From positions 1-64,000 of IMG/VR virus record IMGVR_UViG_3300025121_000282: a DNA stretch of 64,000 bases. One strand, written 5' to 3'. How positions within the stretch are numbered: position 1 is the stretch's first letter; every line of letters begins with the position of its first letter. This document shows, in pieces, positions 28,379 through 61,984 of this stretch. The notes below the pieces were generated by a model that was given only the letters and a program-made list of their open reading frames with translations, searched no databases and had not been told where the DNA came from. Position numbers and translations under genes: made by a program.

Positions 28379-28709
28379 CATCCAAGAATTAAACAACATC
28401 TTGGCAAGTATAAATGACATGTCTGCCAAGGCCCTAACTTTGTCTAGGGTACTTTTGGCCGAGGCCAAAGCATCTGATGATGCCACTACTGTAATACAAA
28501 CAAATATGTACGTAAGAATGCTGTCTGCAATGTTAAGTGGCTTGTCTAAACTTAGTCGCCACAAAATCTCTCCCATAAATGTACCCAATTATGTAAAAAA
28601 TGCCAGAGACAAAATGTTTTGGGTAGAAGCCAGAAGAATAGCATACAGCAAAAACAAAACTTCTGAAGTAGAAATTGAAAAGATATGGAAGGGGCTGACT
28701 CGTGCCTAA
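28350..28709 (+). CDS. hypothetical helical protein (start possibly ATG at 28371)
   Basis: Fills the gap to the portal gene. Confidence 0.6.
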   Translation: MLRMFCHMSNIQELNNILASINDMSAKALTLSRVLLAEAKASDDATTVIQTNMYVRMLSAMLSGLSKLSRHKISPINVPNYVKNARDKMFWVEARRIAYSKNKTSEVEIEKIWKGLTRA

Positions 28710-30363
28710 AAGTACAGATCAAGAAGGGCGCGTCGTCCGCACCATACTAACAAGTAATGTGAAAGTTGGCAAACCGTCTCGTAAAAACAGGCTAGCTGCC
28801 AACATCTCTATGGCGCAGAATTCTCAGTTCTATGATACTATCATGTCTGCGGACATGCTCGAATTGCCTCAACCGGGGCAAAACGAAGCCGCTGTAATCA
28901 GACACTTTTATGAGTATGACGAGTATGTTGGTGCTGCCATCGATATGCACACTCAGCTGCCTCTTTCAAAAATTAGGCTAGAGCAAGCTGAGTGCCCTGA
29001 TGTCGAGTTGTCTGAGAAGTCTTACAGATTTTTTTTTAAAATGTGTAAACGTATAAAATTGTTTAAACGTCTGGTTTCTATACTATTTGATTATAATCTC
29101 CATGGTGAGGCAGTTGTATGGGCGGAGGACAGTGCTGACTCTATGCCGTTAGACGTGCGGCACACAACCGAAAGATACATAAATGACTACGGAAAACCTG
29201 TAGAAGAACACATTGTTAGAGACGATGCGGACACTAGAGAAGTAGAGTGGTACAAAAAACATTACAAGGGTTGGGACAAAATTACCACTCTCCCACCTGA
29301 GTGTGTAGAAATAAAAACGTTTCCGTTTTCTAATTTTTCTTCAATAACCATACTACACGATGACCAGACGCGGGCTTTGGTTAACAGGGCTGACATAGAC
29401 CCGGTTTCCGCTCAGGCATACGATGCAATACCCCAAGAACTTAGACCCTATTTGACAGAATCAGATAGGATTCCACTTGGTACCGACCCGAATAAGGGGT
29501 CGTTTGTTTATCACCTAGCCAGGGCAAAATCTGATTATCAAGAACGTGGAGTACCTGTACTTAGGCGATGCCTGAAAACGTTAATTTATAGGGATAAGTT
29601 ACGTCAGGCCCAAACTCAGATCGCTTCCAGAGCTATGACCCCTAAGAGACTGATTTGGGCGGAAGACCTAAGCCCAGAACAGTTGGAAGACCTTCGGGAT
29701 CAGGTGGACATGTCCCTGATGGACCCTGATTTTAGTATTATCACCAACTATCAAGTCAACTGGGAGGAGTTAGGGGCTAGAGACCGTCTTTTAGACTTAG
29801 CATCGGAAGACGAATCCGCAAATAAAAGACTGGTGGCTGGACTCGGTATTACTGAGGGACTGATCACCGGAGAGGCCACCTACTCCGGTGACCGTATGCC
29901 CATAGAGGCAATCAACACCAAGTACATGCTTTTGCGTGAACACATTCAAGAGTATGTTCACGACTATTTATTTGAGCCCATAGCCAGAAAAAAGGGATTT
30001 GTATACATTGACGAGGACGGTGATGAGATAGCGGTGTACCCCACTATTGGGTTCACACGTATGGCACTCACTGATTCTCAGGATGCATATGACAAGCTTT
30101 ATAACCTGTACCAAAAGGGCTCCATTCCAATTAGTGTGATTTTAGACTTGCTTAACATTGAGCCTAGATACGCCAGAAAACAGTTGGAACAAGACCTGTT
30201 TACAGTAAATGACCCCAACTTCAACGAGGTACTCCGCTCCCTGTATGGAGAAATTGGTAGAGCTTTGGTGGAACAGTCTAATGCTGTAGCCAAAACGTCA
30301 GAATACCTTTCTTTGAAGCCTATAGCAAAAGAAGGGTCAGAAGAAGATAACAGGTTCAAGTAA
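28702..30363 (+). CDS. portal protein
   Basis: 553 aa, largely helical, in the canonical position between terL and the protease/capsid genes; 'EYVGAAIDMHTQLPLS' and 'GVPVLRRCLKTL' resemble large-phage portals. Confidence 0.72.
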   Translation: MPKSTDQEGRVVRTILTSNVKVGKPSRKNRLAANISMAQNSQFYDTIMSADMLELPQPGQNEAAVIRHFYEYDEYVGAAIDMHTQLPLSKIRLEQAECPDVELSEKSYRFFFKMCKRIKLFKRLVSILFDYNLHGEAVVWAEDSADSMPLDVRHTTERYINDYGKPVEEHIVRDDADTREVEWYKKHYKGWDKITTLPPECVEIKTFPFSNFSSITILHDDQTRALVNRADIDPVSAQAYDAIPQELRPYLTESDRIPLGTDPNKGSFVYHLARAKSDYQERGVPVLRRCLKTLIYRDKLRQAQTQIASRAMTPKRLIWAEDLSPEQLEDLRDQVDMSLMDPDFSIITNYQVNWEELGARDRLLDLASEDESANKRLVAGLGITEGLITGEATYSGDRMPIEAINTKYMLLREHIQEYVHDYLFEPIARKKGFVYIDEDGDEIAVYPTIGFTRMALTDSQDAYDKLYNLYQKGSIPISVILDLLNIEPRYARKQLEQDLFTVNDPNFNEVLRSLYGEIGRALVEQSNAVAKTSEYLSLKPIAKEGSEEDNRFK

Positions 30364-30371
30364 GGGCACCC

Positions 30372-30995
30372 ATGAAGTATCAATTTGCTACCGACAAAGA
30401 CCCTAATTCTTTAGGGACTGGTGTAAACCTCACTCCAGCCCAAAAAGAAGATAAAGAGGCCCGTCGTCTGGTACGCCCTGCACCTAAATTTAGAAATGTC
30501 AGAAGGGATGTCAGAAGAGAAATTGTAATTGACCCCACAGAGCCAGAAACAGGGTCAAAAGAGATAATCGCTTCGGAGTCTAAGTTAGTTTTAGTTTTTG
30601 ATGATGACGATTTTGACGATGACCCGTATAGGTTAGCTCAGGCGTGTGACATCAGACCATCTAATGTACACGACTTTTTGTGCGGCCATGTGAACGGCAA
30701 AAGAAAAGTAGTTTCTGCTCTCTTTTGTGGAGTGTCTGGTGACACAATGAGTTTTGATATTGTGGTAGACCCAGAATACAGAAGGCTTGGTTTAGCAAGT
30801 GACTTGGTAAAAGTGGTTATAGATGAGTACGAATCAAACCGAGAAGCAGTCCCAGACTTAGTATTGCAAGCAGACGCAGTTAACCCAAACATGCAAAAAA
30901 TATTATTGGATAATGGTTTTAAAATTACTAGGCCCTCTCACAGTGGTTATAACATGGAAAAAGTCTCTTCACTCCTAAGACACTCCCTGCGTTAA
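30372..30995 (+). CDS. GNAT-family acetyltransferase with basic N-terminal extension
   Basis: Acetyl-CoA motif A 'IVVDPEYRRLGLASDLV' and motif B 'AVNPNMQKILLDNGF'. Confidence 0.75.
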   Translation: MKYQFATDKDPNSLGTGVNLTPAQKEDKEARRLVRPAPKFRNVRRDVRREIVIDPTEPETGSKEIIASESKLVLVFDDDDFDDDPYRLAQACDIRPSNVHDFLCGHVNGKRKVVSALFCGVSGDTMSFDIVVDPEYRRLGLASDLVKVVIDEYESNREAVPDLVLQADAVNPNMQKILLDNGFKITRPSHSGYNMEKVSSLLRHSLR

Positions 30996-31465: not shown

Positions 31466-32032
31466 GTGGAAACACCCGCACCCAATGATGAGTACCATCC
31501 CGATTCCAGAGAATTGGGGAACCATTATAATGTGGGTGATTTTGTAGCTAGACAATTACCTGATGGCGGTATCACTGACGTAGTTGGCGTAATCACCGCC
31601 GTTCTCCGTAAAATTGGATTTGTAGACGTAGAGTTTCCTACAGGAAATGAGCGGATTTCCATTGTAGAAGTGTGGAAAGTACCTAAGGACTCCATATTTT
31701 ATGCCCCCGCTACGCTGAACACTTCCATGGAAACATGGGACACCTCTATGTCTAGATATCTAGATGGGGTTAATTCTGGGTATAGCTACGCTCACCCAAG
31801 AGTTAGCAGTGTTGTTTCGAAGCACATGTTTCGTACATACAGCCCTGTAGTCTCCTTTATTAAAAGGGCTTTCTCAGCGGGGCTTTCTTCAAAACAGATA
31901 ACTGATGTGCTTGGGCGTGTTTTACCTTCCAATTCATTTGTTGAAATGCAAGAATTGGTCGCACACGTCCATGGCGAAGTCTTTAGAAGCAAATTGCCTT
32001 TACTCCAAATGGATAATATAACGGTGAGTTAA
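31466..32032 (+). CDS. hypothetical head-module protein with SH3/KOW-like N-terminal fold
   Basis: 'VGDFVAR...GVITAV...VDVEFP'; coupled to the protease gene. Confidence 0.55.
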   Translation: METPAPNDEYHPDSRELGNHYNVGDFVARQLPDGGITDVVGVITAVLRKIGFVDVEFPTGNERISIVEVWKVPKDSIFYAPATLNTSMETWDTSMSRYLDGVNSGYSYAHPRVSSVVSKHMFRTYSPVVSFIKRAFSAGLSSKQITDVLGRVLPSNSFVEMQELVAHVHGEVFRSKLPLLQMDNITVS

Positions 32033-33498
32033 TGGGGTTTATACGAACGGCTGAAGCTGCTGTCATACACACGGGCTGGACTCGTGAGCAGTGGGGTCGT
32101 ATTCGTGACGAGGCAAAAGACCAGGGCGGCAATGACCGTTTGGCCTCCGTTAATGAAGAATTTAGGCACTTTGACCCTAGCAAGTATTTGTTATCTCATC
32201 TAACAATAATGTGTTCTGTTGATGTGGAAGAGTCTCCACTACCGTTAGGTAAATTCAACTCTTCAAAAATAAAGTCTTCTTCGCTAACTAAGTTTCTACC
32301 CGGCTACGGCATAACTAATCGCAATTTCTCAGATTTTTTAGTTAAGCCTGAACACTCTAAGTACGTGAATGGCAACGGTGACTGTTGGGAACGGAAGCTT
32401 TTACTCTCTGCGTACAAGACCTTTATAGGCGGGGCAAACTATTATGAACACTTACAGGTCCCGGAATTAAATAAGGGCATAATAGTAGATGCTGTCGCTC
32501 GCGATGTCGGGGACACAATTTACATCGACCTGTTGAAAGCAACTGATCGTAAGCACACATATATAACAGAAGACCTTGAGTCGGATGTGCTTAATACAGC
32601 AAGTATGGGGTGTAACGCTTCCTTTGCTATTTGTACTAGATGTGGAAACGTTGCTATAGAAGACACGGACGTCTGTGATTGCGTGTCTCAGGGCTATAAG
32701 CTCAGTTATTACACTGACAACGACATTCGCAGGATCGTGGCTGAGCTAATAGGCCACTGGTCCGACCCCAATTCTTGTGTATTTTTTGAGTCGTCATGGG
32801 TTCGCAATCCAGCCTTTAAAGGCGCTGTAAAACGCAAAATTTTGACCCCACTTGAGGTAAACTCCTCCTCTGGTGTCCCTATCACATTTCCCGAACTAAG
32901 GGTAGCCTCTTTAACGGCCACTCGGTCGGCCCGAGTTGCTAACTTAATGTGGCCCCTACTTGTTGGAAATGTTATGGCCGATGGTACTCCTCAAAAAGGA
33001 CAAGACACTCGGCCCGATGCTCTTAAAAAGTTATACCCACAAAAAACTGCCCCTCCTGCTGAACCCGTTGTGGAGGAGCCTGAGGAATCAGACCCATCCA
33101 CTAAAGAGGAACCAGCACCTCCTCCTGAAGATATTGCCCCGCAGCAGGAGGAGTCTGTAGACCCTCCTGTGGCTGAGCCAGAGCCAGAGCCTGTTGAAGA
33201 CAGGTCCCCCGTTGAGTTGGACATACAGGATGCCAAAGACGCTCTTCGTCAGACGCTCCTGGAGCAGGTTGTAGACGAACTCACAGACAAAAATAAAAAA
33301 GAGTACGTCCCTGATCCTAACCAAGATAACAATCTGTTTGCTACTGTAGCATTGAAGCACATAAATCGTGGTAGAGTAGCCTCAGTTTTGTTTAAATCTG
33401 AAAATGATGTGCATACCACTAAGTACATACAAGCCTTAGCATCAAAGATTGGTGCAGTGCACACCTCCAGACAACCGTCTGGAATTAGACGCCCGTGA
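32032..33498 (+). CDS. prohead (maturation) protease, HK97/herpes assemblin-like, with zinc-ribbon insert and acidic Pro-rich tail
   Basis: His 'YYEH', Ser 'TASMGC', 'ICTRCGN..CDC' insert and 'FESSWVRNPAF' (ExSxVxxPA-type motif). Position before the scaffold and capsid genes. Confidence 0.78.
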   Translation: MGFIRTAEAAVIHTGWTREQWGRIRDEAKDQGGNDRLASVNEEFRHFDPSKYLLSHLTIMCSVDVEESPLPLGKFNSSKIKSSSLTKFLPGYGITNRNFSDFLVKPEHSKYVNGNGDCWERKLLLSAYKTFIGGANYYEHLQVPELNKGIIVDAVARDVGDTIYIDLLKATDRKHTYITEDLESDVLNTASMGCNASFAICTRCGNVAIEDTDVCDCVSQGYKLSYYTDNDIRRIVAELIGHWSDPNSCVFFESSWVRNPAFKGAVKRKILTPLEVNSSSGVPITFPELRVASLTATRSARVANLMWPLLVGNVMADGTPQKGQDTRPDALKKLYPQKTAPPAEPVVEEPEESDPSTKEEPAPPPEDIAPQQEESVDPPVAEPEPEPVEDRSPVELDIQDAKDALRQTLLEQVVDELTDKNKKEYVPDPNQDNNLFATVALKHINRGRVASVLFKSENDVHTTKYIQALASKIGAVHTSRQPSGIRRP

Positions 33499-33515
33499 AG
33501 GGTGTGGAGTAGACC

Positions 33516-34454
33516 ATGTCTGATCGTAATCGTTCCACCTGGAGCCGGGCGGCTGCAACCAATCGTCAGGCCGACCCGTTCACAATGAACCAGACTCGCG
33601 TTCAGCCCAGTGAGGATGCCTATGCAAATGGGGACCCGTCAACTTGGGGTGAAGATGTGGACCACAGCAACATGTGGAAGAATGAGACACGTAATGAGAT
33701 CGGCCAGCCTGTGCCGCACTCTAACGTGATAGATTCCGCGCTGCAGGTAGAGGAAGCTGCCCGTGTTGCTGCCCAGAAAGCGGCAACAGCGGCAACTACT
33801 CCTCCCCCCGTAGACCCCACCATTTTTCAGTATCACCTGAAGAGAGCAAAGCTCGCAACTATGATTGCAGAGTCTATGCTTCCTGGTGGCACCTCCGACG
33901 AGGTTGTTGTGGCCTCAGCCGGACATCTGATGTACCTCCCGGACACGGCTCTTGCAGGGCTGAGAGAAGTTCAGCGTAATGCTGGTCTGGTTAAGTATGC
34001 CAAGGAAGAGGCACCCGCTCCCGAGGCTCCCGCTCCCGAGGTTGTGGCACCCGCTCCCGAGGCTCCCGCTCCTGTGAATGCCTCAATGGACTTTGACGCA
34101 GAATTAGAAGCAGCACTTTTTGCTGGTACAGAAGAAGGTCAGGGCGGAGATAATGGTATAGAACTGCCCTCTTGTGATCTTGGCCTTGAAGACCCGGCCG
34201 AGGGTGTAGACCCAATTATAGCAGCACTGTTTGAGCAGGCACTACCCGCCCCCGTAGTGCGTGCGGCCTCGGTTACTCGGACAGCTTCCCAACAGCCCCA
34301 GGCCCCTGCTACGCCGCAGCGGCTGGGTGCGGCGCCCAGAGCGAGAATGGCCTCTGGGGACGCAAACAGAGCGTCAGCTGACCTTTCGGCCCTTTGGAGT
34401 TCAGAGCCCGACGTGTCAGCCCACTTTGGGACCCCCATCAGCATCAAAGACTAA
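33516..34454 (+). CDS. probable capsid scaffolding protein
   Basis: Ala/Pro/Glu-rich low-complexity protein between the protease and the decoration/capsid genes; strong GGAG ribosome-binding site. Confidence 0.6.
   Translation: MSDRNRSTWSRAAATNRQADPFTMNQTRVQPSEDAYANGDPSTWGEDVDHSNMWKNETRNEIGQPVPHSNVIDSALQVEEAARVAAQKAATAATTPPPVDPTIFQYHLKRAKLATMIAESMLPGGTSDEVVVASAGHLMYLPDTALAGLREVQRNAGLVKYAKEEAPAPEAPAPEVVAPAPEAPAPVNASMDFDAELEAALFAGTEEGQGGDNGIELPSCDLGLEDPAEGVDPIIAALFEQALPAPVVRAASVTRTASQQPQAPATPQRLGAAPRARMASGDANRASADLSALWSSEPDVSAHFGTPISIKD
34011..34072 (+). repeat. 26-bp direct repeat (period 36) encoding APAPEAPAP
   Basis: gcacccgctcccgaggctcccgctcc at 34011-34036 and 34047-34072. Confidence 0.9.
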
Positions 34455-36061: not shown

Positions 36062-36937
36062 ATGTCAGTAAGTAACGCAGTGAAGCAGCAGAAGATTGCT
36101 GAACTCATTGGATCTCAGGGCGGCCGTGACATTATCGCCCGTTCAATGATTCAGCCCCTTCGGTCCCGTCGTGACTATTTCGCTGTAGGGCGTAAGTCAC
36201 TCCACGTCGAGCAGCTTCCCGATGGTGCGCTCCCGATTTATGACAAGGATGTGGACGTCGTCGCCTACATCGTGTCGGAAGAGGGTGATAACATCGTTGC
36301 TGTGCAGAAGCCTCGCCGGGTTCATTTCCCGACCTTCGAGATTGCTGCCAACCCTGAGATTCCCCTGTCTCAGATCCGCCAGCGCCGGTTCGACGTGATC
36401 GACCGGTCGCAGGACGCGGCCAGAAGCCAGATTCAGGCTGCTGAAGACCAGCGGTACTTTGCTACCCTGGATTCGGTTGCTGTTGACGGCTACGACAATG
36501 TGTCGGGCTCGGCTGCACGTGACGTTCAGGTCATTGCTCCCATCTCCCCCAGCGTTCTTGCTGAGGCCTTCTCGGAGATTGAGCAGAACGACCTCCAGGT
36601 CAGCCGGATGTTCTTCAATGCGAAGGACTACAGCGACGTCCGCAAGTTCGGCAGAGACATCCTGGACATCGAGTCCCAGGCCGTCCTGCTGAAGACCGGT
36701 CTGATGGCGCAGCTTTGGGGCGCGCAGATCATGATCAGCCGACTGGTCCCCCAGGGCTTCGTTTATATCGTCTGCGAGCCGCTGTACTTGGGGAGAATGC
36801 CAGTACGCACAGAACTCACCGTAATATCCGCTGATGACCCTAGACGCCGTATGATAGGCTTCTCGGTCTTCGAAGAGATTGGCATTGGCGTGTATAACCC
36901 CGCTGGCGTCACCCGTCTCGTGGTACAGCGCGGTTAA
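36062..36937 (+). CDS. major capsid protein (HK97-like fold, no delta domain)
   Basis: 291 aa with the strongest C/G-ending codon bias in the window; 'VEQLPDGALPIYDKD' and 'FPTFEIAANPEI' resemble large-phage capsid proteins. Last gene of the head operon, followed by a hairpin. Confidence 0.8.
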   Translation: MSVSNAVKQQKIAELIGSQGGRDIIARSMIQPLRSRRDYFAVGRKSLHVEQLPDGALPIYDKDVDVVAYIVSEEGDNIVAVQKPRRVHFPTFEIAANPEIPLSQIRQRRFDVIDRSQDAARSQIQAAEDQRYFATLDSVAVDGYDNVSGSAARDVQVIAPISPSVLAEAFSEIEQNDLQVSRMFFNAKDYSDVRKFGRDILDIESQAVLLKTGLMAQLWGAQIMISRLVPQGFVYIVCEPLYLGRMPVRTELTVISADDPRRRMIGFSVFEEIGIGVYNPAGVTRLVVQRG

Positions 36938-40242: not shown

Positions 40243-40677
40243 ATGACTACCATTGCAGATGCCATTTTAAGAGTAGCTTCGGTTTTACAAATCTCTGCTG
40301 ATAAACCTGTTGACAGGCTGCAAGTTATAATAGACAAAATTACTGAAGAGATGAAGATCAGTGACAACCCTGGTCTTGAACGTTTTCCAGCCGTTGTACG
40401 GTATCTAAGAGACCACAGAACGTCTGAATCCCTAGCCACAGACGTTCTGCATAAGATGTTCCCTAAAGACATGTCCCGTGATGTCAAGAACACTGTGTAC
40501 ACCAATAGGTACAACCCTAAAGTTGGTGACCATGTTAAGATTGTTGGTGGCAACTACAATGGGCATGTTGGTACCGTTCAAAGCCTGCACGAAGACAAAG
40601 TTATAATTGTTCTCAATAAACCAGTTACTGTTACGTATCATTCAGTATCAGTCCCTGACGTTTACATACATCGATAA
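40243..40677 (+). CDS. KOW-motif protein
   Basis: C-terminal 'KVGDHVKIVGGNYNGHVGTVQS'; N-terminal 'ILRVAS'. Confidence 0.65.
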   Translation: MTTIADAILRVASVLQISADKPVDRLQVIIDKITEEMKISDNPGLERFPAVVRYLRDHRTSESLATDVLHKMFPKDMSRDVKNTVYTNRYNPKVGDHVKIVGGNYNGHVGTVQSLHEDKVIIVLNKPVTVTYHSVSVPDVYIHR

Positions 40678-55338: not shown

Positions 55339-55398
55339 CCAACCTGAGGGCAACCAAAGATGTCATTCAAGAAACTTTCTGCTCAACTCCGATCCGCT
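55339..55398 (+). repeat. 5' cassette repeat (UTR plus first 13 codons), copy 1
   Basis: 54 of 60 nt identical (my count) to 61542..61601. Confidence 0.9.
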
Positions 55399-55743
55399 CT
55401 AAAGTTTTATGATATAGCCGAAACAATAGACATGGGGGACATAAGGGTAGACCTGCGAGACCGAGATACATGGTATGGTATAGCTGGGGACTTTAGGGGT
55501 ATAGAAAAATCATGGAAAGATGGCCCTCCTATTTACACCATAGAAGTAGCAGACCGTCTTGATTTGTTATCTGACTACGACAATGAAGATGTGGTATAGC
55601 TGATAAACGAAACGACCGAGACTCTGCGTTTGATGCTTGAGAGCACATACAAAACTATATCTCAAGAAGAGGGGTATCATTTGATCCCATCTCCAGAGAA
55701 AATATTTGAAAGCCAAGACGCCTACATAAAAAGTGGTGTGTGA
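55360..55743 (+). pseudogene. KLSAQLRSA-leader protein interrupted by an in-frame TAG at 55597-55599
   Basis: The ORF track stops at 55599, but the frame stays open for 47 more codons to TGA 55741-55743, about 20 nt before the hairpin. Read-through length is 127 aa. Confidence 0.55.
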
Positions 55744-55763
55744 CAAGTAACGCAACCCTGTAA

Positions 55764-55814
55764 CTGAGCCCCAGTTTTGAGTTTTCCTCACTGGGGCTCA
55801 GCTGTATTTGAAAT
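55764..55814 (+). terminator. hairpin with GTATTTG tail, 3' cassette repeat copy 1
   Basis: 12-bp stem ctgagccccagt / actggggctcag; 55765..55814 is 49/50 identical to 61935..61984. Confidence 0.8.
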
Positions 55815-55864
55815 AGCTCTTTATTGGTGTTCGTACACACAAGAAGCAATGGAGATGTACGAGC

Positions 55865-56311
55865 ATGGAAAAGTTGTCTGTACTTTTACTGAAGTCAGTG
55901 CTTGGTGGTGAGTCTAGTGTTCCTAAAAAATACATGCACATTGACTTCAAGCCTCCTATGTCGGTAGCAGATGCCGCCGCCAAAGGGCTTGAATACAGGA
56001 GAAGAGCCTCTCCCTCAAATAAAGGAGGCTTAACTCCTGCAGAAGCTGCTAAGCATGGTCTGGGGTCCGGAGTACAAAGGGCCATAAACTTAAAGAACAG
56101 AGACCGCGTATCACCAGAAGTTATACGCCAGATGGTATCTTTCTTTTCACGTCATGAGAAGAACGCAACCATAGAGCCTGAAAACAAAGAAACCCCTTGG
56201 AACGACAGGGGTTATGTCGCGTGGCTTCTTTGGGGTGGAGACCCGGGCAGGTCCTGGGCTAATAAGGTTATGAACCAAATGCGTGCAGCAGATAATAAAT
56301 ATAACGATTGA
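55865..56311 (+). CDS. conserved phage hypothetical protein (WLLWGGD motif)
   Basis: 'AAAKGLEYRR', 'MVSFFSRHE' and 'GYVAWLLWGGDPG' resemble a widespread small phage protein family; function unknown. Confidence 0.6.
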   Translation: MEKLSVLLLKSVLGGESSVPKKYMHIDFKPPMSVADAAAKGLEYRRRASPSNKGGLTPAEAAKHGLGSGVQRAINLKNRDRVSPEVIRQMVSFFSRHEKNATIEPENKETPWNDRGYVAWLLWGGDPGRSWANKVMNQMRAADNKYND

Positions 56312-56332
56312 CAGTCCGACTTATAATGGGAA

Positions 56333-56360
56333 GTACTCCATAACTAGTAGTGTGGAGTGT
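56333..56360 (+). promoter_or_regulatory. hairpin overlapping the Shine-Dalgarno sequence of the PARP gene
   Basis: actcca (56335-56340) / tggagt (56353-56358); TATAAT at 56322-56327 just upstream. Confidence 0.4.
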
Positions 56361-57910
56361 CTCAAGTGGGAACTATTGCGCACAATGTCGTCCTCAACTT
56401 CACTGATCTGACTGGCGACAAGACCGGCTGTGTAACACTTGGCTCCAATAAGTTCTGGAAGGGCCACGTGGTTGATCACGGAAATGGTACTGCAGACTTC
56501 GAGTGTAAGTGGGGCCCTACAGGAGAGCCTGGGTCAGACAAAGGTAGCAAGAGGGGGATTTCACTTGCTGAGGCCATCAAGATTCTCAATTCGAAAGTGG
56601 CCGAGAAGGAAAAGAAGGGTTACACCCGCCTTCAGGTACGGGATGATGCTGAAGAGGCCGCCAAGCAGGCAGCGAAGGGCATCGTAGCGGCTGTGGCTCC
56701 TGGCATTGCAGCTGCTCCAGCCCCCAAGCGTATTTTCCACCCTGAGGTGGGTAAGCTTCTCTCCACGATTTATGGAGCTACATCTACAGTAGTTCGAGCC
56801 GGTTTGTCATCTCAGGCGGGTGCTACAGCTAGCAATCCCATCGGAAACCTCTCCGATAGCCAACTGGACATTGGTGGGTCGATCTTGGATGAAATCGGAC
56901 TCGCTCTTGAAGCTGAATTCGGTCGAGAGTCCACCAACAACAAAGCCACCACTTTCCCTCTCGCCAAAGACGGCACTCCCAGTCCGAAAGTGATCGACCT
57001 GACCAATCGATTTATGTCCAATGTTCCAAGGGAAATTGGGCGAGAAATGCGTGGTCGTGAGAATCTTCATCGACTGGTCATCTCAAGTTATGAGCGCCTC
57101 CAGGCTCAGCGTGAATTCCTACAACTGTTGAGAGACGCGCATCTGACGCAAGCAGTCTTTCAGGCAGCAGGAGCACAGACTGCCTCCTCTGACAAAGAGG
57201 CAGTCTGGTACGACGGGTTGAATTGTGCCATCGAGCACTTGGACCCAGCAAGTCCCGAATTCCGCAGGGTGGTCGAGATCTTTAGCACTGGCCAGAGTCA
57301 GAAGAACTCAAACTGGTTTCGTAATGGTCGATCCACTCTGCGAGTGGCTAACGTTTTCAAATACTGCAGAAACGGAACGGAGTCCACTTTTAGTGCCTAC
57401 GCCGACAAGGTAGCCCGAAAGCCTGGAGCAGTTGGCAAAATCATGGCATGGCATGGTACGAAAGCCGAAAACACTATCGGGATATCCAAGCAGGGTCTTT
57501 TGATGCCTGAGAATTTGCCGCGGGGTGTGAGTCAAACTGGCAAAGCCTTTGGAAAAGGGATCTACCACGCCCCTAACTTCCTCGTTGCTGGAGTTAAAAC
57601 GGTTGGTCCTTACCCCACTGATGGTACTAATGGTGCGCTCAAGAGCATGAACTATACCGGCATGTCTGGAGCCGCTTATGGTGGCGGGAATGCCGCGGCA
57701 TACATGTTTCTTCAAGAAGTGGCTTTGGGTAAGGCTGATGTCCATTTCTCAGCTTGTTGGGATAAACACCGCCCCAACGACTTCCCGAACAACGACTTTA
57801 TCTTTGCTTGTGGTGCCAAGAACCAAGGCGGTTTTGTCCACGACGAAATTGTGACATTCGACCAGAACGCACAGAAGTTCGCTTATTTACTTCTCATCAA
57901 GAGTGTCTAG
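56357..57910 (+). CDS. PARP-like ADP-ribosyltransferase with WGR, helical regulatory and catalytic domains (start possibly GTG 56366)
   Basis: WGR-like 'SNKFW...CKWGPTG'; regulatory-like 'IGNLSDSQL' and 'DLTNRFMSNVP'; catalytic H-Y-E triad 'WHGT', 'FGKGIYHA', 'HDEIVTFD'. Confidence 0.9.
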   Translation: MSQVGTIAHNVVLNFTDLTGDKTGCVTLGSNKFWKGHVVDHGNGTADFECKWGPTGEPGSDKGSKRGISLAEAIKILNSKVAEKEKKGYTRLQVRDDAEEAAKQAAKGIVAAVAPGIAAAPAPKRIFHPEVGKLLSTIYGATSTVVRAGLSSQAGATASNPIGNLSDSQLDIGGSILDEIGLALEAEFGRESTNNKATTFPLAKDGTPSPKVIDLTNRFMSNVPREIGREMRGRENLHRLVISSYERLQAQREFLQLLRDAHLTQAVFQAAGAQTASSDKEAVWYDGLNCAIEHLDPASPEFRRVVEIFSTGQSQKNSNWFRNGRSTLRVANVFKYCRNGTESTFSAYADKVARKPGAVGKIMAWHGTKAENTIGISKQGLLMPENLPRGVSQTGKAFGKGIYHAPNFLVAGVKTVGPYPTDGTNGALKSMNYTGMSGAAYGGGNAAAYMFLQEVALGKADVHFSACWDKHRPNDFPNNDFIFACGAKNQGGFVHDEIVTFDQNAQKFAYLLLIKSV

Positions 57911-58001
57911 AAAAGCAAACTTCAGTCTTGACAAGTCTCGATTGACCCTACCCCTCTTGTGACGAATAAGTTGTAAGCCCTAACCAACTGGAGTATATAC
58001 T

Positions 58002-58145
58002 ATGGTCATCATCGTTATCCTGCTCGTCTGCTCTGCCCTCGGCTATGCCATGGCGGGAACCCGCAAGAAGGCCCTTGGAGCAATCCTCGGTTTCTTCCTG
58101 GGACCATTCGGTATCCTGATCGCCGCCATTGCGTGCAAGGACTGA
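58002..58145 (+). CDS. 47-aa two-TM membrane protein (not in ORF track)
   Basis: Translated by hand as MVIIVILLVCSALGYAMAGTRKKALGAILGFFLGPFGILIAAIACKD; GGAG ribosome-binding site upstream. Confidence 0.75.
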   Translation: MVIIVILLVCSALGYAMAGTRKKALGAILGFFLGPFGILIAAIACKD

Positions 58146-58149
58146 TGCC

Positions 58150-58470
58150 ATGAGCACTTATTCAAAATGGCTTCTGACCATCTTGTCCGTGGTTGCCGTG
58201 CTTTCGGGCGCTACCTACTTTCATCGCTATAGGAAAGATCACTGCAAGGAACGACTCAAGGCGCAGGCTAGTGAATTCGCCATAATGAATGAGGGGGAGG
58301 TCCGAGCGTGTTATGGTGATCTCACCACGAGTGCGGCCCTGGATACCCATATCAAATCACTCGGGTTGGCTTCTGGGGCTGAGCTGACCTGGAGTGAGAG
58401 GCATGACGCCTTTGTCGCCATTGCCAAGGGTAGGTTCGCAGACGGCAATACGGGAGGACTGGTCAAATGA
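58150..58470 (+). CDS. N-terminally anchored membrane protein
   Basis: MSTYSKWLLTILSVVAVLSGATYF hydrophobic anchor; in frame with track ORF 58129..58470. Confidence 0.6.
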   Translation: MSTYSKWLLTILSVVAVLSGATYFHRYRKDHCKERLKAQASEFAIMNEGEVRACYGDLTTSAALDTHIKSLGLASGAELTWSERHDAFVAIAKGRFADGNTGGLVK

Positions 58471-58646
58471 ACACCCTCCTGAAACTCGCCATGACCTTTC
58501 TTTTTGCTACGGGCTGTGGTCGAGGCACCACGTGTACGAGTGGTGCAGGCTGCTTCGTCGGGCTGTATTGCACATCTTCGGGGTTCTGCCAGGACAATTC
58601 CGAGAATGCACCAAAGGTCATCTACATTTACAAAGACTGCCGCTGA
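58467..58646 (+). CDS. 59-aa Cys-rich putative lipoprotein (not in ORF track)
   Basis: MNTLLKLAMTFLFATG|CGRGTTCTSGAGCFVGLYCTSSGFCQDN...; lipobox-like Cys and an ATGA overlap. Confidence 0.75.
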   Translation: MNTLLKLAMTFLFATGCGRGTTCTSGAGCFVGLYCTSSGFCQDNSENAPKVIYIYKDCR

Positions 58647-58648
58647 AC

Positions 58649-58870
58649 ATGAATACCCTCCTAATCCTCACCTTCATCCTGGCCTGTGGGTGCTCCCGTC
58701 TGGGAGAGGATTGCTTCAACCATTGGGATTGTGACGACAACCAGAGGTGTTCTTTTTCTGGCACCTGTCGTTTGTCTTGGTATCTGGACAGATGTGTGGA
58801 GAAGAATTCCTGCGCCCATGGGCTGTATTGCTCAGACCCAGGCGTCTGCCTGCGGGAACCGAAGGACTGA
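58649..58870 (+). CDS. 73-aa Cys-rich putative lipoprotein
   Basis: MNTLLILTFILACG|CSRLGEDC..C..C..C plus a second C..C..GLYC..C module. Confidence 0.75.
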   Translation: MNTLLILTFILACGCSRLGEDCFNHWDCDDNQRCSFSGTCRLSWYLDRCVEKNSCAHGLYCSDPGVCLREPKD

Positions 58871-58874
58871 TCCC

Positions 58875-59141
58875 ATGAACACCTTCCTCAAATTCCTTCT
58901 GATCGCGTCCCTCATTGCCCCCAGCGCCGTTCAGGCCAAGCCCTGCGGTCGCGGGTACATCGCGGACAACAAGGTCTGTCACAAGGGTGGTGGATACTAC
59001 CTCCCGGCCCCCGCCCGCAAAGTGCCCAAGACCAAGGGACGTCTTGGTTCTGTGTGTGCCAGCAACTCGGAGTGCAAGAAAGGGCTGTACTGTACCACAT
59101 CGGGTTATTGTCAGGAGAACAACCACAAGGTGGCCAAATGA
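58875..59141 (+). CDS. 88-aa secreted Cys-rich protein
   Basis: Signal peptide ending AVQA, then 'KPCGRGYIADNKVCHKG' and 'CASNSECKKGLYCTTSGYC'. Confidence 0.75.
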   Translation: MNTFLKFLLIASLIAPSAVQAKPCGRGYIADNKVCHKGGGYYLPAPARKVPKTKGRLGSVCASNSECKKGLYCTTSGYCQENNHKVAK

Positions 59142-59473
59142 ACACCCTGAATACCATCCTGACAATAACCCTGGTCACTGCCCTCATCTTGCCCAATGCG
59201 GCCGGCGCCAAGCCATGTGGGGATAGTTACATCTCAGACAACGAGACCTGTCACAAAGGCGGGGGCGGGGATGACAGCACCCCGCCTTCTTGGGGAAGTG
59301 TTATCCTTTGGAGTTCAGTGGTTGTTGGGGGCTTGTTTTTCCTGGCCTGGGCCACGAGTAAAAGCGGCAACCCGTCTCACGGTACAGGTCCTGGCCCAAA
59401 TGTGCAGCGGGGCGACTCGTTCGAGTCCTTTGTACAAGACCTCGGCGGGACTGTCACTATCACTCACAAGTGA
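59138..59473 (+). CDS. 111-aa exported, membrane-anchored Cys-motif protein
   Basis: Signal peptide ending AAGA, 'KPCGDSYISDNETCHKG', then a TM helix. Confidence 0.75.
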   Translation: MNTLNTILTITLVTALILPNAAGAKPCGDSYISDNETCHKGGGGDDSTPPSWGSVILWSSVVVGGLFFLAWATSKSGNPSHGTGPGPNVQRGDSFESFVQDLGGTVTITHK

Positions 59474-59480
59474 GGAGAAA

Positions 59481-59702
59481 ATGGCACATAGACCTAACAG
59501 AACCCTGCAAGACACAGATGACCACATTGTTTCAATTGTGGTCGTGATTGTAGCCGTACTATTCGCACTTGGGGTTGGGGTGTATACAGTCTCATCCAGC
59601 ATCGACTGTGACCGCAAGTGTGCACCCAAGCAGGGTGTATTCGCCCGCCAAATCATGTCTTACCAGTGTGTCTGTGTAGACCCAGAAGACATAAAAGAAT
59701 AG
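59481..59702 (+). CDS. 73-aa single-TM protein with Cys4 C-terminal domain
   Basis: GAGGAG ribosome-binding site, TM 'IVSIVVVIVAVLFALGVGVY', then C..C..CxC. Confidence 0.7.
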   Translation: MAHRPNRTLQDTDDHIVSIVVVIVAVLFALGVGVYTVSSSIDCDRKCAPKQGVFARQIMSYQCVCVDPEDIKE

Positions 59703-59725
59703 CCTTTTAATTTGGTTTTGATGTT

Positions 59726-60109
59726 ATGCAAAAACTCTCTACCAAACTCAAAAACATATTCAGAAATAAAATCACTCCTCGGATCAAGACGGAGTTTGCC
59801 AATCGGGCCGAGAAGGCCGGATTGGACGGCAAAGGTCGTTTCCCTACTATAGGCAGGGCCATTAACATCATCAATGGCATCCTTGAAAAGCCCTACACCC
59901 TGAGTGATGGCACCCAAGTCTCCATAGAATTGGACGACATCACCTCTGCGGACCTTTTCGTGAAGAGTCCGGCACCCGCTCTTTCCATCTCGCCTTTAAA
60001 ACTACTGACCCTTTTCTCTCCGGACCCCATTGGCAACTCGATGCTTGCCATGTCCTGGCACTACATCAAAGAGCGGGACAACTACGAGGTCCTGGCCTAC
60101 CTGTCGTAA
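59726..60109 (+). CDS. hypothetical protein with KLS-type N-terminus
   Basis: 127-aa ORF starting MQKLSTKLK. Confidence 0.6.
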   Translation: MQKLSTKLKNIFRNKITPRIKTEFANRAEKAGLDGKGRFPTIGRAINIINGILEKPYTLSDGTQVSIELDDITSADLFVKSPAPALSISPLKLLTLFSPDPIGNSMLAMSWHYIKERDNYEVLAYLS

Positions 60110-60157
60110 TTGACCCGCTATAAACTTATGGTAAATAACTCCGAGGGACTATTATAA

Positions 60158-60592
60158 ATGACCGATAAACTCTCAGATCAACTCCGTTTTGCCATGGCTT
60201 TCTCCCGGAGAGATTTTATAGACAGAGCCCACGAGTACATTGCTGGTGCCATCATAGAGTTTTATAAGGTTAAGCTCGCTAAGAAAAATGGTTTTACTAA
60301 GTGGGTTGTACACTGGGATAACGAGTCTAAGCGGTTGATTGACAGACAACTTGTTCTGCTATTTCTGCACCCCATCCGTGGATTTAAAGACACGAAGTCT
60401 GCGGCTTTGCAGGCGCTTAGTGATATCATGGTTGGCAGCAATGGGTACCAAACTGTCGCCACTAATGATGTAAAGAAGGATTTTAAAGTTCAGGGTCTCC
60501 AGACAGGCCTAGACGAGCAAGACGCCCAAGACTTTAAAAACTGGGTCAGTTTGGCCATTGAGGCTAATCATGACCTGAGGGTCCGAAAATGA
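60158..60592 (+). CDS. KLSxQLRxA-leader protein, tandem paralogue 1
   Basis: MTDKLSDQLRFA; colinear homology to 60589..61008. Confidence 0.8.
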   Translation: MTDKLSDQLRFAMAFSRRDFIDRAHEYIAGAIIEFYKVKLAKKNGFTKWVVHWDNESKRLIDRQLVLLFLHPIRGFKDTKSAALQALSDIMVGSNGYQTVATNDVKKDFKVQGLQTGLDEQDAQDFKNWVSLAIEANHDLRVRK

Positions 60593-61008
60593 CCGATAAA
60601 CTCTCAGACCAACTTCGCTATGCAATGGCTTTCTCCCGTCGCGACTTCATCGACAGAGCCCACGAGTACATCTCAGGTGCTATCAGAGAATTCTATAAAG
60701 CTAAACTGGCCCGTAAAAATGGCCTTACTGAGTGGGTCACCCACTGGGATAACGAGGCAAAGCGTTTGGTAAATGACCAGCTTGCTGCGTTATTCTTGCA
60801 TCCGATTCGAGGTTTTAAAAACAAGAAACAAGCTGCCACTCAGGCATTCGAGGACATCTTTGAAAAAAGTGCGGGGTACCAGAGGATCGCTACTACTACC
60901 GTCAAACGAGACTTTAACGTCACCGGTCTAGTCCACAGCCTCGATGTCAGTGATGCTGATGAGTTTCGAGAGTGGGTATTGTCAGTCATCAGCGAGTCGG
61001 AGGACTAA
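60589..61008 (+). CDS. KLSxQLRxA-leader protein, tandem paralogue 2
   Basis: MTDKLSDQLRYA; shares SRRDFIDRAHEYI, HWDNE and FLHPIRGFK with the upstream gene. Confidence 0.8.
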   Translation: MTDKLSDQLRYAMAFSRRDFIDRAHEYISGAIREFYKAKLARKNGLTEWVTHWDNEAKRLVNDQLAALFLHPIRGFKNKKQAATQAFEDIFEKSAGYQRIATTTVKRDFNVTGLVHSLDVSDADEFREWVLSVISESED

Positions 61009-61013
61009 TTGCA

Positions 61014-61043
61014 ATGACTGATAAACTATCAAAGAGTCACTAG
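61014..61043 (+). pseudogene. truncated third copy or minigene MTDKLSKSH
   Basis: atgactgataaactatca matches the paralogue start, has GGAGG upstream, and stops after 9 codons. Confidence 0.5.
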
Positions 61044-61091
61044 ACAATACCCCCTTAATATGTTTTATTGGCAAAAATAGGAGTTAGTAAA

Positions 61092-61484
61092 ATGAATAAA
61101 CTCTCTGTCCAACTCCGTGAAGCCGCCGCAGACTACAGGTCTTGGTTCATTGTCCTTGACAAGGATGGGGACGAGCCGAAGACTGAGTACAAGGTGAGCG
61201 GGTGGACTACCCTGCTCAGTACCCTGGATGATGCAGCTGACGTGGCTGGTTATGACGCAGACGAGGAAAAGTATACCATTTTTGAGGTACTTCCCACTTC
61301 TGACATTTACCCCCACTCCAAAGCCATTGACCTGGGGGCCACAGGAGAACCGCACGAAGATGGGGCAGAACCTGGAGAATCAGAGTACCCTTCTGGTCAG
61401 CCCATGGCTATGGTAAAAGGCAAGAGCTATAATGTGGTTAAGACATACAAATATGACACAGACAAGAAAAAGTTTGTGAACTAA
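61092..61484 (+). CDS. acidic KLSxQLRxA-leader protein
   Basis: MNKLSVQLREAA; AGGAG ribosome-binding site before ATG 61092 (in frame with track ORF 61068). Confidence 0.75.
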   Translation: MNKLSVQLREAAADYRSWFIVLDKDGDEPKTEYKVSGWTTLLSTLDDAADVAGYDADEEKYTIFEVLPTSDIYPHSKAIDLGATGEPHEDGAEPGESEYPSGQPMAMVKGKSYNVVKTYKYDTDKKKFVN

Positions 61485-61541
61485 ATAGCACTGATCACTG
61501 GTCCCACTTGGTCATTGTTTTATAGGCCTTTGTGATTACAG

Positions 61542-61601
61542 CCAACCTGAGGACAACCAAAGATGTCTTTCAAGAAACTTTCTGCTCAACTTCGTTCTGC
61601 C
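61542..61601 (+). repeat. 5' cassette repeat copy 2
   Basis: 54 of 60 nt identical to 55339..55398. Confidence 0.9.
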
Positions 61602-61910
61602 GCTGGTAGTAAAATTGACGGCTCTATGTGTTTAACCAACGACCACGACATGGGAACCCCAACCAAGTTTGTGGCTTGGTCTTTTGACGCAGCTTTAAAG
61701 TACCTTTTAAAGTCTCCGCGTCACGCTGTTGTGCTAAAAAGCCCCGAGGGTAAGGTTGCAGTATTTTGTGGAGCAAGCGACGGTCCCAGTAATTATTATG
61801 TCTCAACTTTCCCTATGGACGACCCCAACGACGCAGACGGTGGGGACTGGACTGCTCGCAGTGCTCTTCAAGAAGCTTGCGGCATGACTGTTATGTCTTC
61901 TAACACATAA
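61563..61910 (+). CDS. KLSAQLRSA-leader protein
   Basis: Its first 13 residues are identical to those of the 55360 ORF; the remainder is unrelated. Confidence 0.8.
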   Translation: MSFKKLSAQLRSAAGSKIDGSMCLTNDHDMGTPTKFVAWSFDAALKYLLKSPRHAVVLKSPEGKVAVFCGASDGPSNYYVSTFPMDDPNDADGGDWTARSALQEACGMTVMSSNT

Positions 61911-61934: not shown

Positions 61935-61984
61935 TGAGCCCCAGTTTTGAGTTTTCCTCGCTGGGGCTCAGCTGTATTTGAAAT
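61935..61984 (+). terminator. hairpin with GTATTTG tail, 3' cassette repeat copy 2
   Basis: tgagccccag / ctggggctca stem; 49/50 identical to 55765..55814. Confidence 0.8.

What the first reader, a model, noticed from the sequence alone, without database searches (positions are those of the whole stretch)
55360..61910. Shared N-terminal KLSxQLRxA leader on otherwise unrelated small proteins
MSFKKLSAQLRSA (55360, 61563), MTDKLSDQLRFA/YA (60158, 60589), MNKLSVQLREA (61092), plus weaker MQKLSTKLK (59726) and the MTDKLS remnant (61014). At least four unrelated bodies carry it, with different codons in different groups, which points to selection at the protein level. It is an amphipathic basic helix ending in R-x-A, the same pattern as the putative protease site in head proteins. 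Inference: a cleavable capsid-targeting propeptide.
Basis: partly seen in the sequence, partly recalled or inferred. Interest (0 to 1): 0.8.

Follow-up and report, generated by a model that had tools for sequence, protein, structure and literature searches.

The report
Short address tag on phage proteins
A nine-residue helix (K-L-S-x-Q-L-R-x-A) starts six otherwise unrelated small proteins of an uncultured groundwater jumbo phage and ends one head-module protein, so it is most likely an address label that loads accessory proteins into the phage head, working like the T4 capsid-targeting sequence but unrelated to it in sequence.

Summary
K-[LIV]-S-x-x-L-[RK] occurs seven times in the window's proteome, always at a protein end. 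Six copies are at N-termini in the 55.3-61.9 kb gene cluster. About 0.25 hits are expected by chance, and there are no terminal hits in about 1.08 million residues of related phages. The bodies are unrelated, and homologues of bodies D and E lack the tag. Substitutions in the core fall only on third codon positions, and the two free positions lie on one helix face.

The window is the start of a 315 kb phage of the phage G lineage. Its relatives carry a different, roughly 27-residue helix-turn-helix tag with the same distribution: the C-terminus of the post-portal protein and the N-termini of many unrelated proteins. That tag matches 3,504 protein clusters and has no Pfam family. The window has none of it.

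Best reading: a portable docking tag, probably for incorporation into the procapsid. Cleavage after R-x-A is untested and only weakly supported. The A-type genes also look like cassettes, with a conserved 59-nt 5' block and a 50-nt 3' hairpin.

The parts
55360..55599 (+). Gene A1 (79 aa). The tag MSFKKLSAQLRSA is encoded by 55360-55398.
   Evidence: Called as a 79-aa gene in independent assemblies.
55339..55397 (+). Conserved 5' block of the A cassette (ribosome-binding region plus 13 codons). It is 92% identical to 61542-61600.
   Evidence: There is 1 difference in the 21 nt upstream, and the 5 coding differences are all synonymous.
55765..55814 (+). Conserved 3' hairpin of the A1 cassette (stem TGAGCCCCAG / CTGGGGCTCA). 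It is 98% identical to 61935-61984.
   Evidence: Folding gives -26.4 kcal/mol, z -5.0.
55865..56311 (+). Gene E (148 aa) with the weak tag variant MEKLSVLLLKS. Body residues 23-137 match phrog_2859.
   Evidence: It uses TTG/TTA Leu codons, so the similarity is at protein level only.
59726..60109 (+). Gene D (127 aa) with the weaker tag MQKLSTKLKNI. Homology to tag-less relatives begins at about residue 14.
59698..59718 (+). 21-nt upstream element shared by D and C (second copy at 61046-61066).
   Evidence: 2 hits against 0.01 expected
60158..60592 (+). Gene B1 (144 aa) with the tag MTDKLSDQLRFA.
   Evidence: Remote homologues keep a related N-terminal helix.
60589..61008 (+). Gene B2 (139 aa), a paralogue of B1, with the tag MTDKLSDQLRYA.
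61014..61043 (+). Remnant of a third B-type start (MTDKLSKSH-stop), with a B-like ribosome-binding region.
   Evidence: repeat family D6
61092..61484 (+). Gene C (130 aa) with the tag MNKLSVQLREA.
61563..61910 (+). Gene A2 (115 aa) with the tag MSFKKLSAQLRSA, followed by a predicted flexible linker.
   Evidence: The AF2 model has a helix at residues 3-14, then a low-confidence stretch.
61935..61984 (+). Conserved 3' hairpin of the A2 cassette.
   Evidence: Folding gives -27.1 kcal/mol, z -4.3.
30372..30995 (+). Post-portal head-module protein (207 aa, GNAT domain). Its last residues, encoded by 30960-30992, are KVSSLLRHSLR: a C-terminal copy of the tag.
28702..30363 (+). Portal protein (context).
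32032..33498 (+). Prohead protease with a C-terminal scaffold-like extension. It carries DRLAS, ELRVAS and GRVAS.
33516..34454 (+). Scaffold-like protein with three R-x-A-S motifs and HLKRA.
36062..36937 (+). Major capsid protein, phage G type. It is the candidate shell to which the tag would dock.
40243..40677 (+). 144-aa gene downstream of the capsid gene. Its N-terminus, MTTIADAILRVASVL, is intermediate between the window tag and helix 1 of the relatives' tag, and it shares RVASVL with the protease. It is a possible further member.
   Evidence: The link is by inspection only.

Best explanation
K-L-S-x-Q-L-R-x-A is a portable, one-helix docking tag, an address label. Its conserved face (L2, L6 and A9, flanked by K1, Q5, S3 and R7) binds one common partner. 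The two free positions (x4, x8) point away from that partner. The partner is most likely a component of the assembling procapsid: the inner surface of the capsid protein, the scaffold, the protease-scaffold or the portal. Tagged accessory proteins would then be enclosed in the head and delivered with the DNA, as T4 internal proteins are through their capsid-targeting sequence.

The tag genes sit in a plastic accessory region. There the tag, together with its ribosome-binding region and in the A type a 3' hairpin, also acts as a cassette boundary that lets new bodies be placed behind it.

Shown: the motif, its strictly terminal position, selection on the peptide, its modularity, and the parallel tag system in relatives. 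Inferred: that the partner is in the procapsid, and that the proteins are packaged. Open: whether the tag is cut off after R-x-A. My estimate that it is cut is about 0.35.
For: - Position: 7 of 7 occurrences are terminal. Shuffles give 0.25 in total and 0.016 terminal. Relatives have 0 terminal hits in 1.08 million residues.
- Selection on the peptide: in the conserved codons only third positions vary. A1 and A2 differ by 5 synonymous and 0 non-synonymous changes. Copy E and the C-terminal copy use other codon families.
- One docking face: on a 100-degree helical wheel, A9, L2 and L6 lie at 80-140 degrees and x4 and x8 at 300-340 degrees. This follows directly from the sequence.
- Modularity: the bodies are unrelated. 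Both D homologues and the PHROG family matching E's body lack the tag.
- Link to the head: one copy ends the protein encoded right after the portal.
- The same pattern in relatives: in phages with capsid protein 67-70% identical, that same post-portal protein ends in a 27-residue helix-turn-helix tag. That tag also starts many unrelated small proteins. LR745208 has 10 such copies, one of them between the scaffold and decoration genes. L060 and L126 have copies a few kb from the capsid gene.
- Scale of the relatives' tag: 3,504 clusters match it. Of the top 150, 121 have an N-terminal copy and 55 a C-terminal copy.
- Possible substitution: the window has no such tag, the best score being 4.9 bits. 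The KLS tag could therefore be its substitute.
- Structure: AF2 models put the tag outside the folded body (low confidence).
Against: - There is no virion proteomics, and the phage is uncultured.
- The tagged genes lie after the replication module, among early-type accessory genes, not in the head module.
- The post-portal GNAT protein is called a head component from its position alone.
- In body B the tag region has a counterpart in remote homologues, so there it may simply be part of the fold.
- The link between the KLS tag and the relatives' tag rests on shared position and distribution, not on demonstrable homology.
- The relatives' tag also occurs internally and in 2-5 copies. It could therefore be a general interaction module for some other hub.
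- Only the first 71 kb of the 315 kb genome could be read, so the census is incomplete.
Confidence: 0.5

Rival explanations
1. It is a docking tag for a partner outside the capsid. The helix would bind a common host or phage hub, such as a chaperone, a polymerase or a membrane complex, and so bring different effector bodies to one place in the infected cell.
For: The same evidence for a selected, modular, one-faced terminal helix applies. The genes lie in an accessory region next to a PARP-like enzyme and secreted proteins. The relatives' tag is multi-copy and sometimes internal, as general interaction modules are.
Against: The copy on the post-portal head-module protein, and the relatives' tag on the same protein and on genes inside head modules, point to the head.
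Confidence: 0.2
2. It is a by-product of local duplication and cassette exchange. The 5' end is kept because it carries the translation start region. The peptide itself would have no function beyond good initiation.
For: The genes form a tandem cluster. The B1/B2 duplication and a truncated third B start are present. The A cassettes have a conserved 59-nt 5' block and a 98% identical 3' hairpin around unrelated bodies. C and D share an upstream element. The five strong copies keep the same, partly rare, codon families; CTC is 8% of Leu codons in the genome.
Against: Variation has a period of three, with zero changes at first and second positions of the seven conserved codons. The two free positions lie on one helix face. 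Copy E and the C-terminal copy share the peptide but neither the codon families nor the flanking DNA, and a C-terminal copy cannot serve initiation. RNA folds of the start regions are not better than shuffles.
Confidence: 0.15
3. It is an RNA or DNA element: an operator for a translational repressor, an sRNA target or a recombination site. The peptide would be incidental.
For: The 21 nt upstream of A1 and A2 are better conserved (1 difference) than the synonymous sites (5 of 8 four-fold sites differ). In B1, B2 and C the Shine-Dalgarno region can pair with the K-L-S codons.
Against: Fold z-scores range from -1.1 to +1.0, and the pairing partners differ between copies. There is no Rfam match. 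Third positions are the variable ones, which is the opposite of what a nucleic-acid motif would show.
Confidence: 0.05
4. It is a secretion or membrane signal (Sec, Tat, lipoprotein or an amphipathic membrane anchor).
For: It is N-terminal and basic. The neighbouring genes at 58.4-59.5 kb do carry classical signal peptides. An unrelated two-transmembrane family in other viral contigs begins MLEKLSPQLRHA.
Against: There is no hydrophobic core of 7 or more residues after the basic part, no twin arginine and no lipobox. One copy is C-terminal. The two-transmembrane family comes from unrelated phages.
Confidence: 0.03

Closest known systems
Capsid-targeting sequence (CTS) of T4 internal proteins (IPI, IPII, IPIII, Alt)
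   Same: A short N-terminal peptide is the only thing shared by a diverse set of small accessory or defence proteins. [quoted passage not shown] The genes lie in plastic loci with conserved flanks.
   Different: There is no sequence similarity to the T4 CTS (my own knowledge of its sequence, not tested here). The phage belongs to the phage G lineage, not the T4 lineage. One copy is C-terminal. Cleavage is unproven, and the candidate site (basic-x-Ala) differs from the Glu-specific T4 site (own knowledge).
The roughly 27-residue helix-turn-helix tag of related huge phages (consensus xLRSxLIRLAHxNPxLRxxLLPxL), which I could not find described
   Same: It has the same two locations: the end of the post-portal protein and the starts of many unrelated proteins. 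It has the same basic, amphipathic character, and both contain an [IL]-R-x-A core.
   Different: The window tag is one helix of 9-11 residues, not two helices. The profile of the relatives' tag finds nothing in the window. Homology between the two tags is not demonstrable.
Encapsulin cargo-loading peptides
   Same: Short terminal peptides on unrelated cargo proteins dock to the interior of an HK97-fold shell (own knowledge).
   Different: The consensus is different. Here the shell is a DNA-filled phage head, and any link is by analogy only.
Coat-binding helix-turn-helix at the C-terminus of the P22 scaffolding protein
   Same: A small, basic helical module binds the inside of the procapsid (own knowledge). 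The multi-copy, highly charged proteins that carry the relatives' tag look scaffold-like.
   Different: The scaffold-like proteins of the window and of its relatives do not themselves carry either tag.
Promoter/stem-loop-flanked gene cassettes of T4-type phages (PeSL elements)
   Same: Unrelated small genes are bounded by short conserved sequences, including a stable stem-loop. This favours shuffling (own knowledge). Here the flanks are a 59-nt 5' block and a 50-nt 3' hairpin.
   Different: Here the 5' boundary reaches 13 codons into the gene and is constrained as a peptide.

Membership tests
T4-type capsid-targeting sequence system | A short N-terminal peptide shared by otherwise unrelated small proteins | tested here: met
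T4-type capsid-targeting sequence system | Sequence similarity to the T4 CTS, and a T4-lineage head (gp23-type capsid protein, gp21-type protease cutting after Glu) | tested here: not met
   The capsid protein is of phage G type. The protease-scaffold has no Pfam match and only weak PHROG 'head maturation protease' hits. That the tag is dissimilar to the T4 CTS rests on my own knowledge of the T4 sequence.
T4-type capsid-targeting sequence system | The tagged proteins are present inside virions and are ejected | not testable with these tools
   The phage is uncultured and I found no proteomics. The phage G multi-omics paper has nothing on propeptides.
T4-type capsid-targeting sequence system | The tag is removed by the prohead protease at its C-terminal end | tested here: inconclusive
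   R-x-A-S is directionally enriched in head proteins. But the leaders end in R-x-A followed by L, A or M, and a C-terminal copy exists.
Helix-turn-helix tag of related huge phages | A match to the profile built from 20 copies (alignment A4) | tested here: not met
   The best score in 71 kb is 4.9 bits. True copies score 20-60 bits.
Helix-turn-helix tag of related huge phages | The same distribution: the C-terminus of the post-portal protein plus the N-termini of unrelated proteins | tested here: met
Encapsulin cargo-loading peptide | A terminal peptide on unrelated cargo together with an HK97-fold shell encoded nearby | tested here: inconclusive
   The terminal tag is present. The capsid protein is homologous to phage G gp27. 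Docking itself was not tested. The consensus differs (own knowledge).
Sec/Tat/lipoprotein signal peptide | A hydrophobic core of 7-15 residues after a basic N-region, then a cleavage site or lipobox | tested here: not met
   The sequences show no hydrophobic core. The neighbouring genes at 58.4-59.5 kb show what real signal peptides look like in this phage.
Known RNA family or cis-regulatory structure | An Rfam match, or a fold significantly more stable than shuffles at the gene starts | tested here: not met

The most novel reading that the evidence does not exclude
Huge phages of the phage G lineage use an undescribed cargo-addressing system. A short terminal peptide, the helix-turn-helix tag in most members and a minimal nine-residue helix in this phage, marks dozens of unrelated proteins per genome, and thousands of clusters overall, for enclosure in the head. 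If so, the injected proteome of uncultured phages can be read from sequence alone. This phage would then show that the address can be replaced as a whole on the cargo set in one lineage: in the 71 kb read, the new tag is on the post-portal protein and on the small accessory proteins.
Probability: 0.35. Interest if true: 0.85.

Novelty: new variant of a known kind. Interest (0 to 1): 0.68.

Why it matters
If the tag is a head-loading address, it identifies from sequence alone which accessory proteins an uncultured 315 kb phage injects with its DNA. Such proteins are prime candidates for first-minute counter-defence factors. The tag would also be a very small, 9-11-residue handle for loading foreign proteins into large capsids.

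The comparison with relatives uncovers a much larger tag family: 3,504 protein clusters, with no Pfam entry and no mention in the searched literature. That makes the question directly testable in any cultivable member of the lineage. It also offers a natural experiment in how an address and its receptor change together.

Tried and rejected
- **RNA structure at the gene starts.** Six folds gave z-scores from -1.1 to +1.0, and the pairing partners were inconsistent. There was no Rfam hit in 54-64 kb.
- **Promoter and terminator consensus scan.** Counts were at shuffle level.
- **Function of the bodies.** There were no Pfam, PHROG or PADLOC hits for A1, A2, B, C or D. The ESM Atlas search for B1 gave only sub-threshold leads. 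The AF2 single-sequence models are weak (pLDDT 61.7 and 50.0). The Foldseek search of the A2 model against the PDB gave nothing below E 0.27.
- **More KLS copies elsewhere.**
  - A strict DNA pattern scan of IMG/VR found only the five window copies on the source contig, plus matches at about the number I estimated for chance (about 28).
  - A pattern scan of the JGI metagenomes that required an upstream GAGG found the four copies that have one (A1, A2, B1, B2) and no copy on any other phage.
  - One recurrent outside hit, a two-transmembrane family that begins MLEKLSPQLRHA, comes from phages sharing no protein with the window. I take it as coincidence.
- **The 'LIRLA' match.** The C-terminus of the LR745208 protease shares this string with that phage's tag. 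I first read this as mimicry. Alignment with other relatives shows that it falls in a differently conserved tail, so I dropped it.
- **Strain variation.** Near-identical contigs differ by only 0-4 substitutions over 6.7 kb, too few for a selection test.
- **Phage G and Tunturi_5.** Partial scans (50 kb and 28 kb) showed no shared leader. I did not fetch the whole genomes.
- **Context of a four-copy tag protein (P0017).** The contig was short and the neighbouring genes unknown.
- **Literature.** String searches for the relatives' tag found nothing.
Full report
**What the window is.** The window is the first 64 kb of a 314,886-bp viral contig, IMGVR_UViG_3300025121_000282, which is the same contig as Ga0208375_1000024. 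Near-identical contigs of up to 341 kb come from groundwater metagenomes, and over the region of interest they are 99.94-100% identical. All genes are on the + strand. PHROG hits identify a ligase, helicases, DNA polymerase A, the large terminase, the portal (28702-30363) and a prohead protease with a long C-terminal extension (32032-33498). The capsid protein (36062-36937) is 65% identical to that of the 485-kb uncultured phage LR745208.1, 42% to Tunturiibacter phage Tunturi_5 and 38% to gp27 of Bacillus phage G. The window is therefore part of a jumbo phage of the phage G lineage.

**The observation.**
- A1 at 55360 and A2 at 61563, both MSFKKLSAQLRSA.
- B1 at 60158 and B2 at 60589, MTDKLSDQLR[FY]A.
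- C at 61092, MNKLSVQLREA.
- D at 59726, MQKLSTKLK.
- A 9-codon remnant at 61014.

In the six-frame translation of the window the motif occurs only at these six N-termini. The DNA pattern gives 6 hits against 0.21 expected. Smith-Waterman scores of the bodies against shuffles show no relationship except between B1 and B2. Independent gene callers on other assemblies called the same genes.

I found two further copies. The first is a weak one at 55865 (MEKLSVLLLKS). The second is more important: KVSSLLRHS, which starts 11 residues before the stop of the 207-aa GNAT protein encoded right after the portal (30372-30995). With the pattern K[LIV]SxxL[RK] the 75-gene proteome has 7 hits, all terminal. 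Shuffles give 0.25 in total and 0.016 terminal. About 1.08 million residues of ORFs from LR745208 and 79 related loci have 5 hits, none terminal.

**Peptide or nucleic acid?** In the five strong copies the nine-codon core varies at 1, 2 and 7 sites for codon positions 1, 2 and 3. Within the seven conserved codons the counts are 0, 0 and 5. A1 and A2 differ by five substitutions in 13 codons, all synonymous, and their bodies diverge completely from codon 14. This is the signature of constraint on the peptide.

The strong copies keep the same codon families, including CTC, the rarest Leu codon of the genome at 8%. They therefore descend from one DNA segment. Only copy E and the C-terminal copy switch families (TTG, TTA, CTA, AGA).

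On a helical wheel A9, L2 and L6 lie at 80-140 degrees and the two unconstrained positions at 300-340 degrees, which gives one docking face and one free face. RNA folds of the six start regions are no better than shuffles, and there is no Rfam match.

**Modularity and cassette structure.** Body D has two homologues, LR745208 462917-462351 and P0016. Their similarity begins at about residue 14 of D, and their N-termini are different. Body E matches phrog_2859 only from residue 23. Body B is different: its remote homologues keep a related basic amphipathic helix in front of the conserved AMA[FY] segment, so in B the tag region may be ancestral.

The A genes are cassettes. A 59-nt 5' block is 92% identical between them. 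A 50-nt 3' hairpin is 98% identical, folds at -26.4 and -27.1 kcal/mol and has z-scores of -5.0 and -4.3. Between the two lie unrelated bodies. C and D share a 21-nt upstream element. A truncated third B start sits at 61014. The locus has clearly been built by duplication and replacement behind a retained start.

**What the relatives show.** An unbiased search for N-terminal 6-mers shared within LR745208 found ten proteins of 93-351 aa, scattered over that genome. All begin with a tag of about 27 residues (consensus M-T-T-LRSKLIRLAHENPALRPHLLPLLKEA), and there is one internal copy. One of them is encoded between the scaffold gene and the decoration and capsid genes. The tag has no Pfam or PHROG family.

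A capsid-protein search of IMG/VR returned more than 574 relatives, of which 80 loci were fetched. A profile of the tag finds it in two settings:
- At the extreme C-terminus of the large (937-1347 aa) protein encoded right after the portal, in eleven loci.
- At the N-termini of small proteins a few kb from the capsid gene, in L060 and L126.

Against 1.84 billion representative proteins the profile has 3,504 hits at E <= 0.001. Of the best 150, 121 have a copy within the first 12 residues, 55 have a copy within 10 residues of the C-terminus, and 40 have both. Proteins carry 2-5 copies separated by highly charged linkers. One hit, P0018, is a GNAT domain followed by five copies. That parallels the window's GNAT protein with its C-terminal KLS copy.

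The window plus the next 7 kb contains no copy of this tag; the best score is 4.9 bits. So the lineage has a terminal tag shared by the post-portal protein and a large, varied set of other proteins, and this phage shows the same pattern with a different, shorter peptide. This co-variation is the main argument that the KLS helix is an address tag tied to the head.

**Cleavage.** R-x-A-S occurs 17 times in the window proteome against 5.7 expected. Three are in the protease-scaffold, three in the scaffold-like protein and three in the 824-aa protein at 22009-24483. The enrichment is directional: 16 against 5 for the reversed pattern in the window. In head-module ORFs of the relatives it is 425 against 225 for R-x-A-S and 412 against 111 for K-x-A-S, though those counts are not phylogenetically independent. 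Many N-terminal copies of the relatives' tag end in L-K-x-A. This is compatible with a basic-x-Ala protease site.

Against cleavage, the KLS leaders have L, A or M after the Ala. The C-terminal copy would lose only two residues if it were cut. The conserved R-x-A is equally explained as part of the docking face. I therefore treat cleavage as open.

**Comparison with known systems.** The closest functional analogue is the T4 capsid-targeting sequence, the only element shared by the diverse T-even internal proteins (PMC3012670). The window tag meets the criterion of a shared terminal peptide on unrelated bodies, and its genes lie in a plastic locus as the T4 genes do. It fails on lineage and sequence. 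Packaging and cleavage could not be tested. Encapsulin cargo-loading peptides and the P22 scaffolding coat-binding helix-turn-helix are analogies for docking to an HK97-fold shell (own knowledge). Signal peptides are excluded because there is no hydrophobic core.

**Limits.** Only 71 of 315 kb could be read. No close relative carrying the KLS tag exists in the scanned collections. The structure models are of low confidence, and the fold search gave nothing. There are no experimental data for this lineage's head contents beyond a phage G particle proteome, which does not address propeptides.

**Verdict.** The capsid-targeting reading is the best-supported explanation (about 0.5). A docking tag for some common partner is more secure than that, at about 0.7 when the two docking readings are combined. 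'Cleavable propeptide' is unproven.

Noticed in passing
LR745208.1 (L034-L043); loci L056, L060, L064, L079, L083, L093, L099, L104, L108, L114, L117, L126, L130; proteins P0017-P0166: A helix-turn-helix tag of about 27 residues (xLRSxLIRLAHxNPxLRxxLLPxL) sits at the N- and/or C-termini of thousands of otherwise unrelated proteins of related huge phages. It matches 3,504 clusters at E <= 0.001, often in 2-5 copies separated by charged linkers. It has no Pfam or PHROG family and no literature hit.
   Followed up: partly
window 56357-57910: A 517-aa protein has WGR, PARP regulatory and PARP catalytic domains (Pfam E 6e-10, 3e-8 and 4e-11). This is a eukaryote-like poly(ADP-ribose) polymerase architecture inside the tag-gene cluster. 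It has no KLS tag.
   Followed up: no
window 58467-59473: Four tandem small genes share an MNT[LF]L signal or lipoprotein peptide and a Cys-rich motif (repeat families D3, D4, D12). This is a second 'shared leader' family, of the classical secretion kind, in a stretch of higher G+C. Gene calls in this stretch differ between otherwise near-identical strains.
   Followed up: no
window 30372-30500; L079:1043-1200; LR745208 404303-404416: A second portable motif (E-x-x-R-L-V-R-P-x-P-K-x-K-P-P-R-x-D-x-R-R) lies near the N-terminus of the post-portal proteins. In LR745208 it lies near the C-terminus of a HAD plus topoisomerase IB protein encoded after the portal.
   Followed up: no
window 32032-34454 and 20950-24483; related loci L056-L134: There is a directional excess of [KR]-x-A-S in head-module proteins: R-x-A-S 425 against 225 reversed, and K-x-A-S 412 against 111 reversed. 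It is a candidate recognition site for the lineage's prohead protease.
   Followed up: partly
window 40243-40677: The N-terminus MTTIADAILRVASVL resembles both helix 1 of the relatives' tag and the KLS tag. It shares the 6-mer RVASVL with the C-terminal part of the protease (residues 448-453). The gene is syntenic with tagged genes downstream of the capsid gene in LR745208 and L060.
   Followed up: partly
L004, L006, L009, L013, L019, L023, L048: A small two-transmembrane protein family (68-89 aa in full-length copies) begins ML[ED]KLSPQLRHA, nearly the window tag. Its viral contigs share no protein with the window, so this is probably coincidence.
   Followed up: partly
window 49575-52352 and 54294-54749: A separate 151-aa ORF 2 kb downstream of the DNA polymerase A gene also matches the DNA_pol_A family (profile positions 181-224). 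It may be a fragment or a split polymerase gene.
   Followed up: no
window 37316-40189 and 24999-28199: The 957-aa protein after the capsid gene combines LAGLIDADG and HNH endonuclease hits with methyltransferase hits. The terminase ORF is 1,066 aa, with its terminase match only in the C-terminal half. Both may contain inteins or fused mobile elements.
   Followed up: no
L026:16645-20224 (window contig about 66.6-70.2 kb): A dCMP deaminase-like gene and a SIR2-family gene follow the tag cluster, just beyond the window.
   Followed up: no
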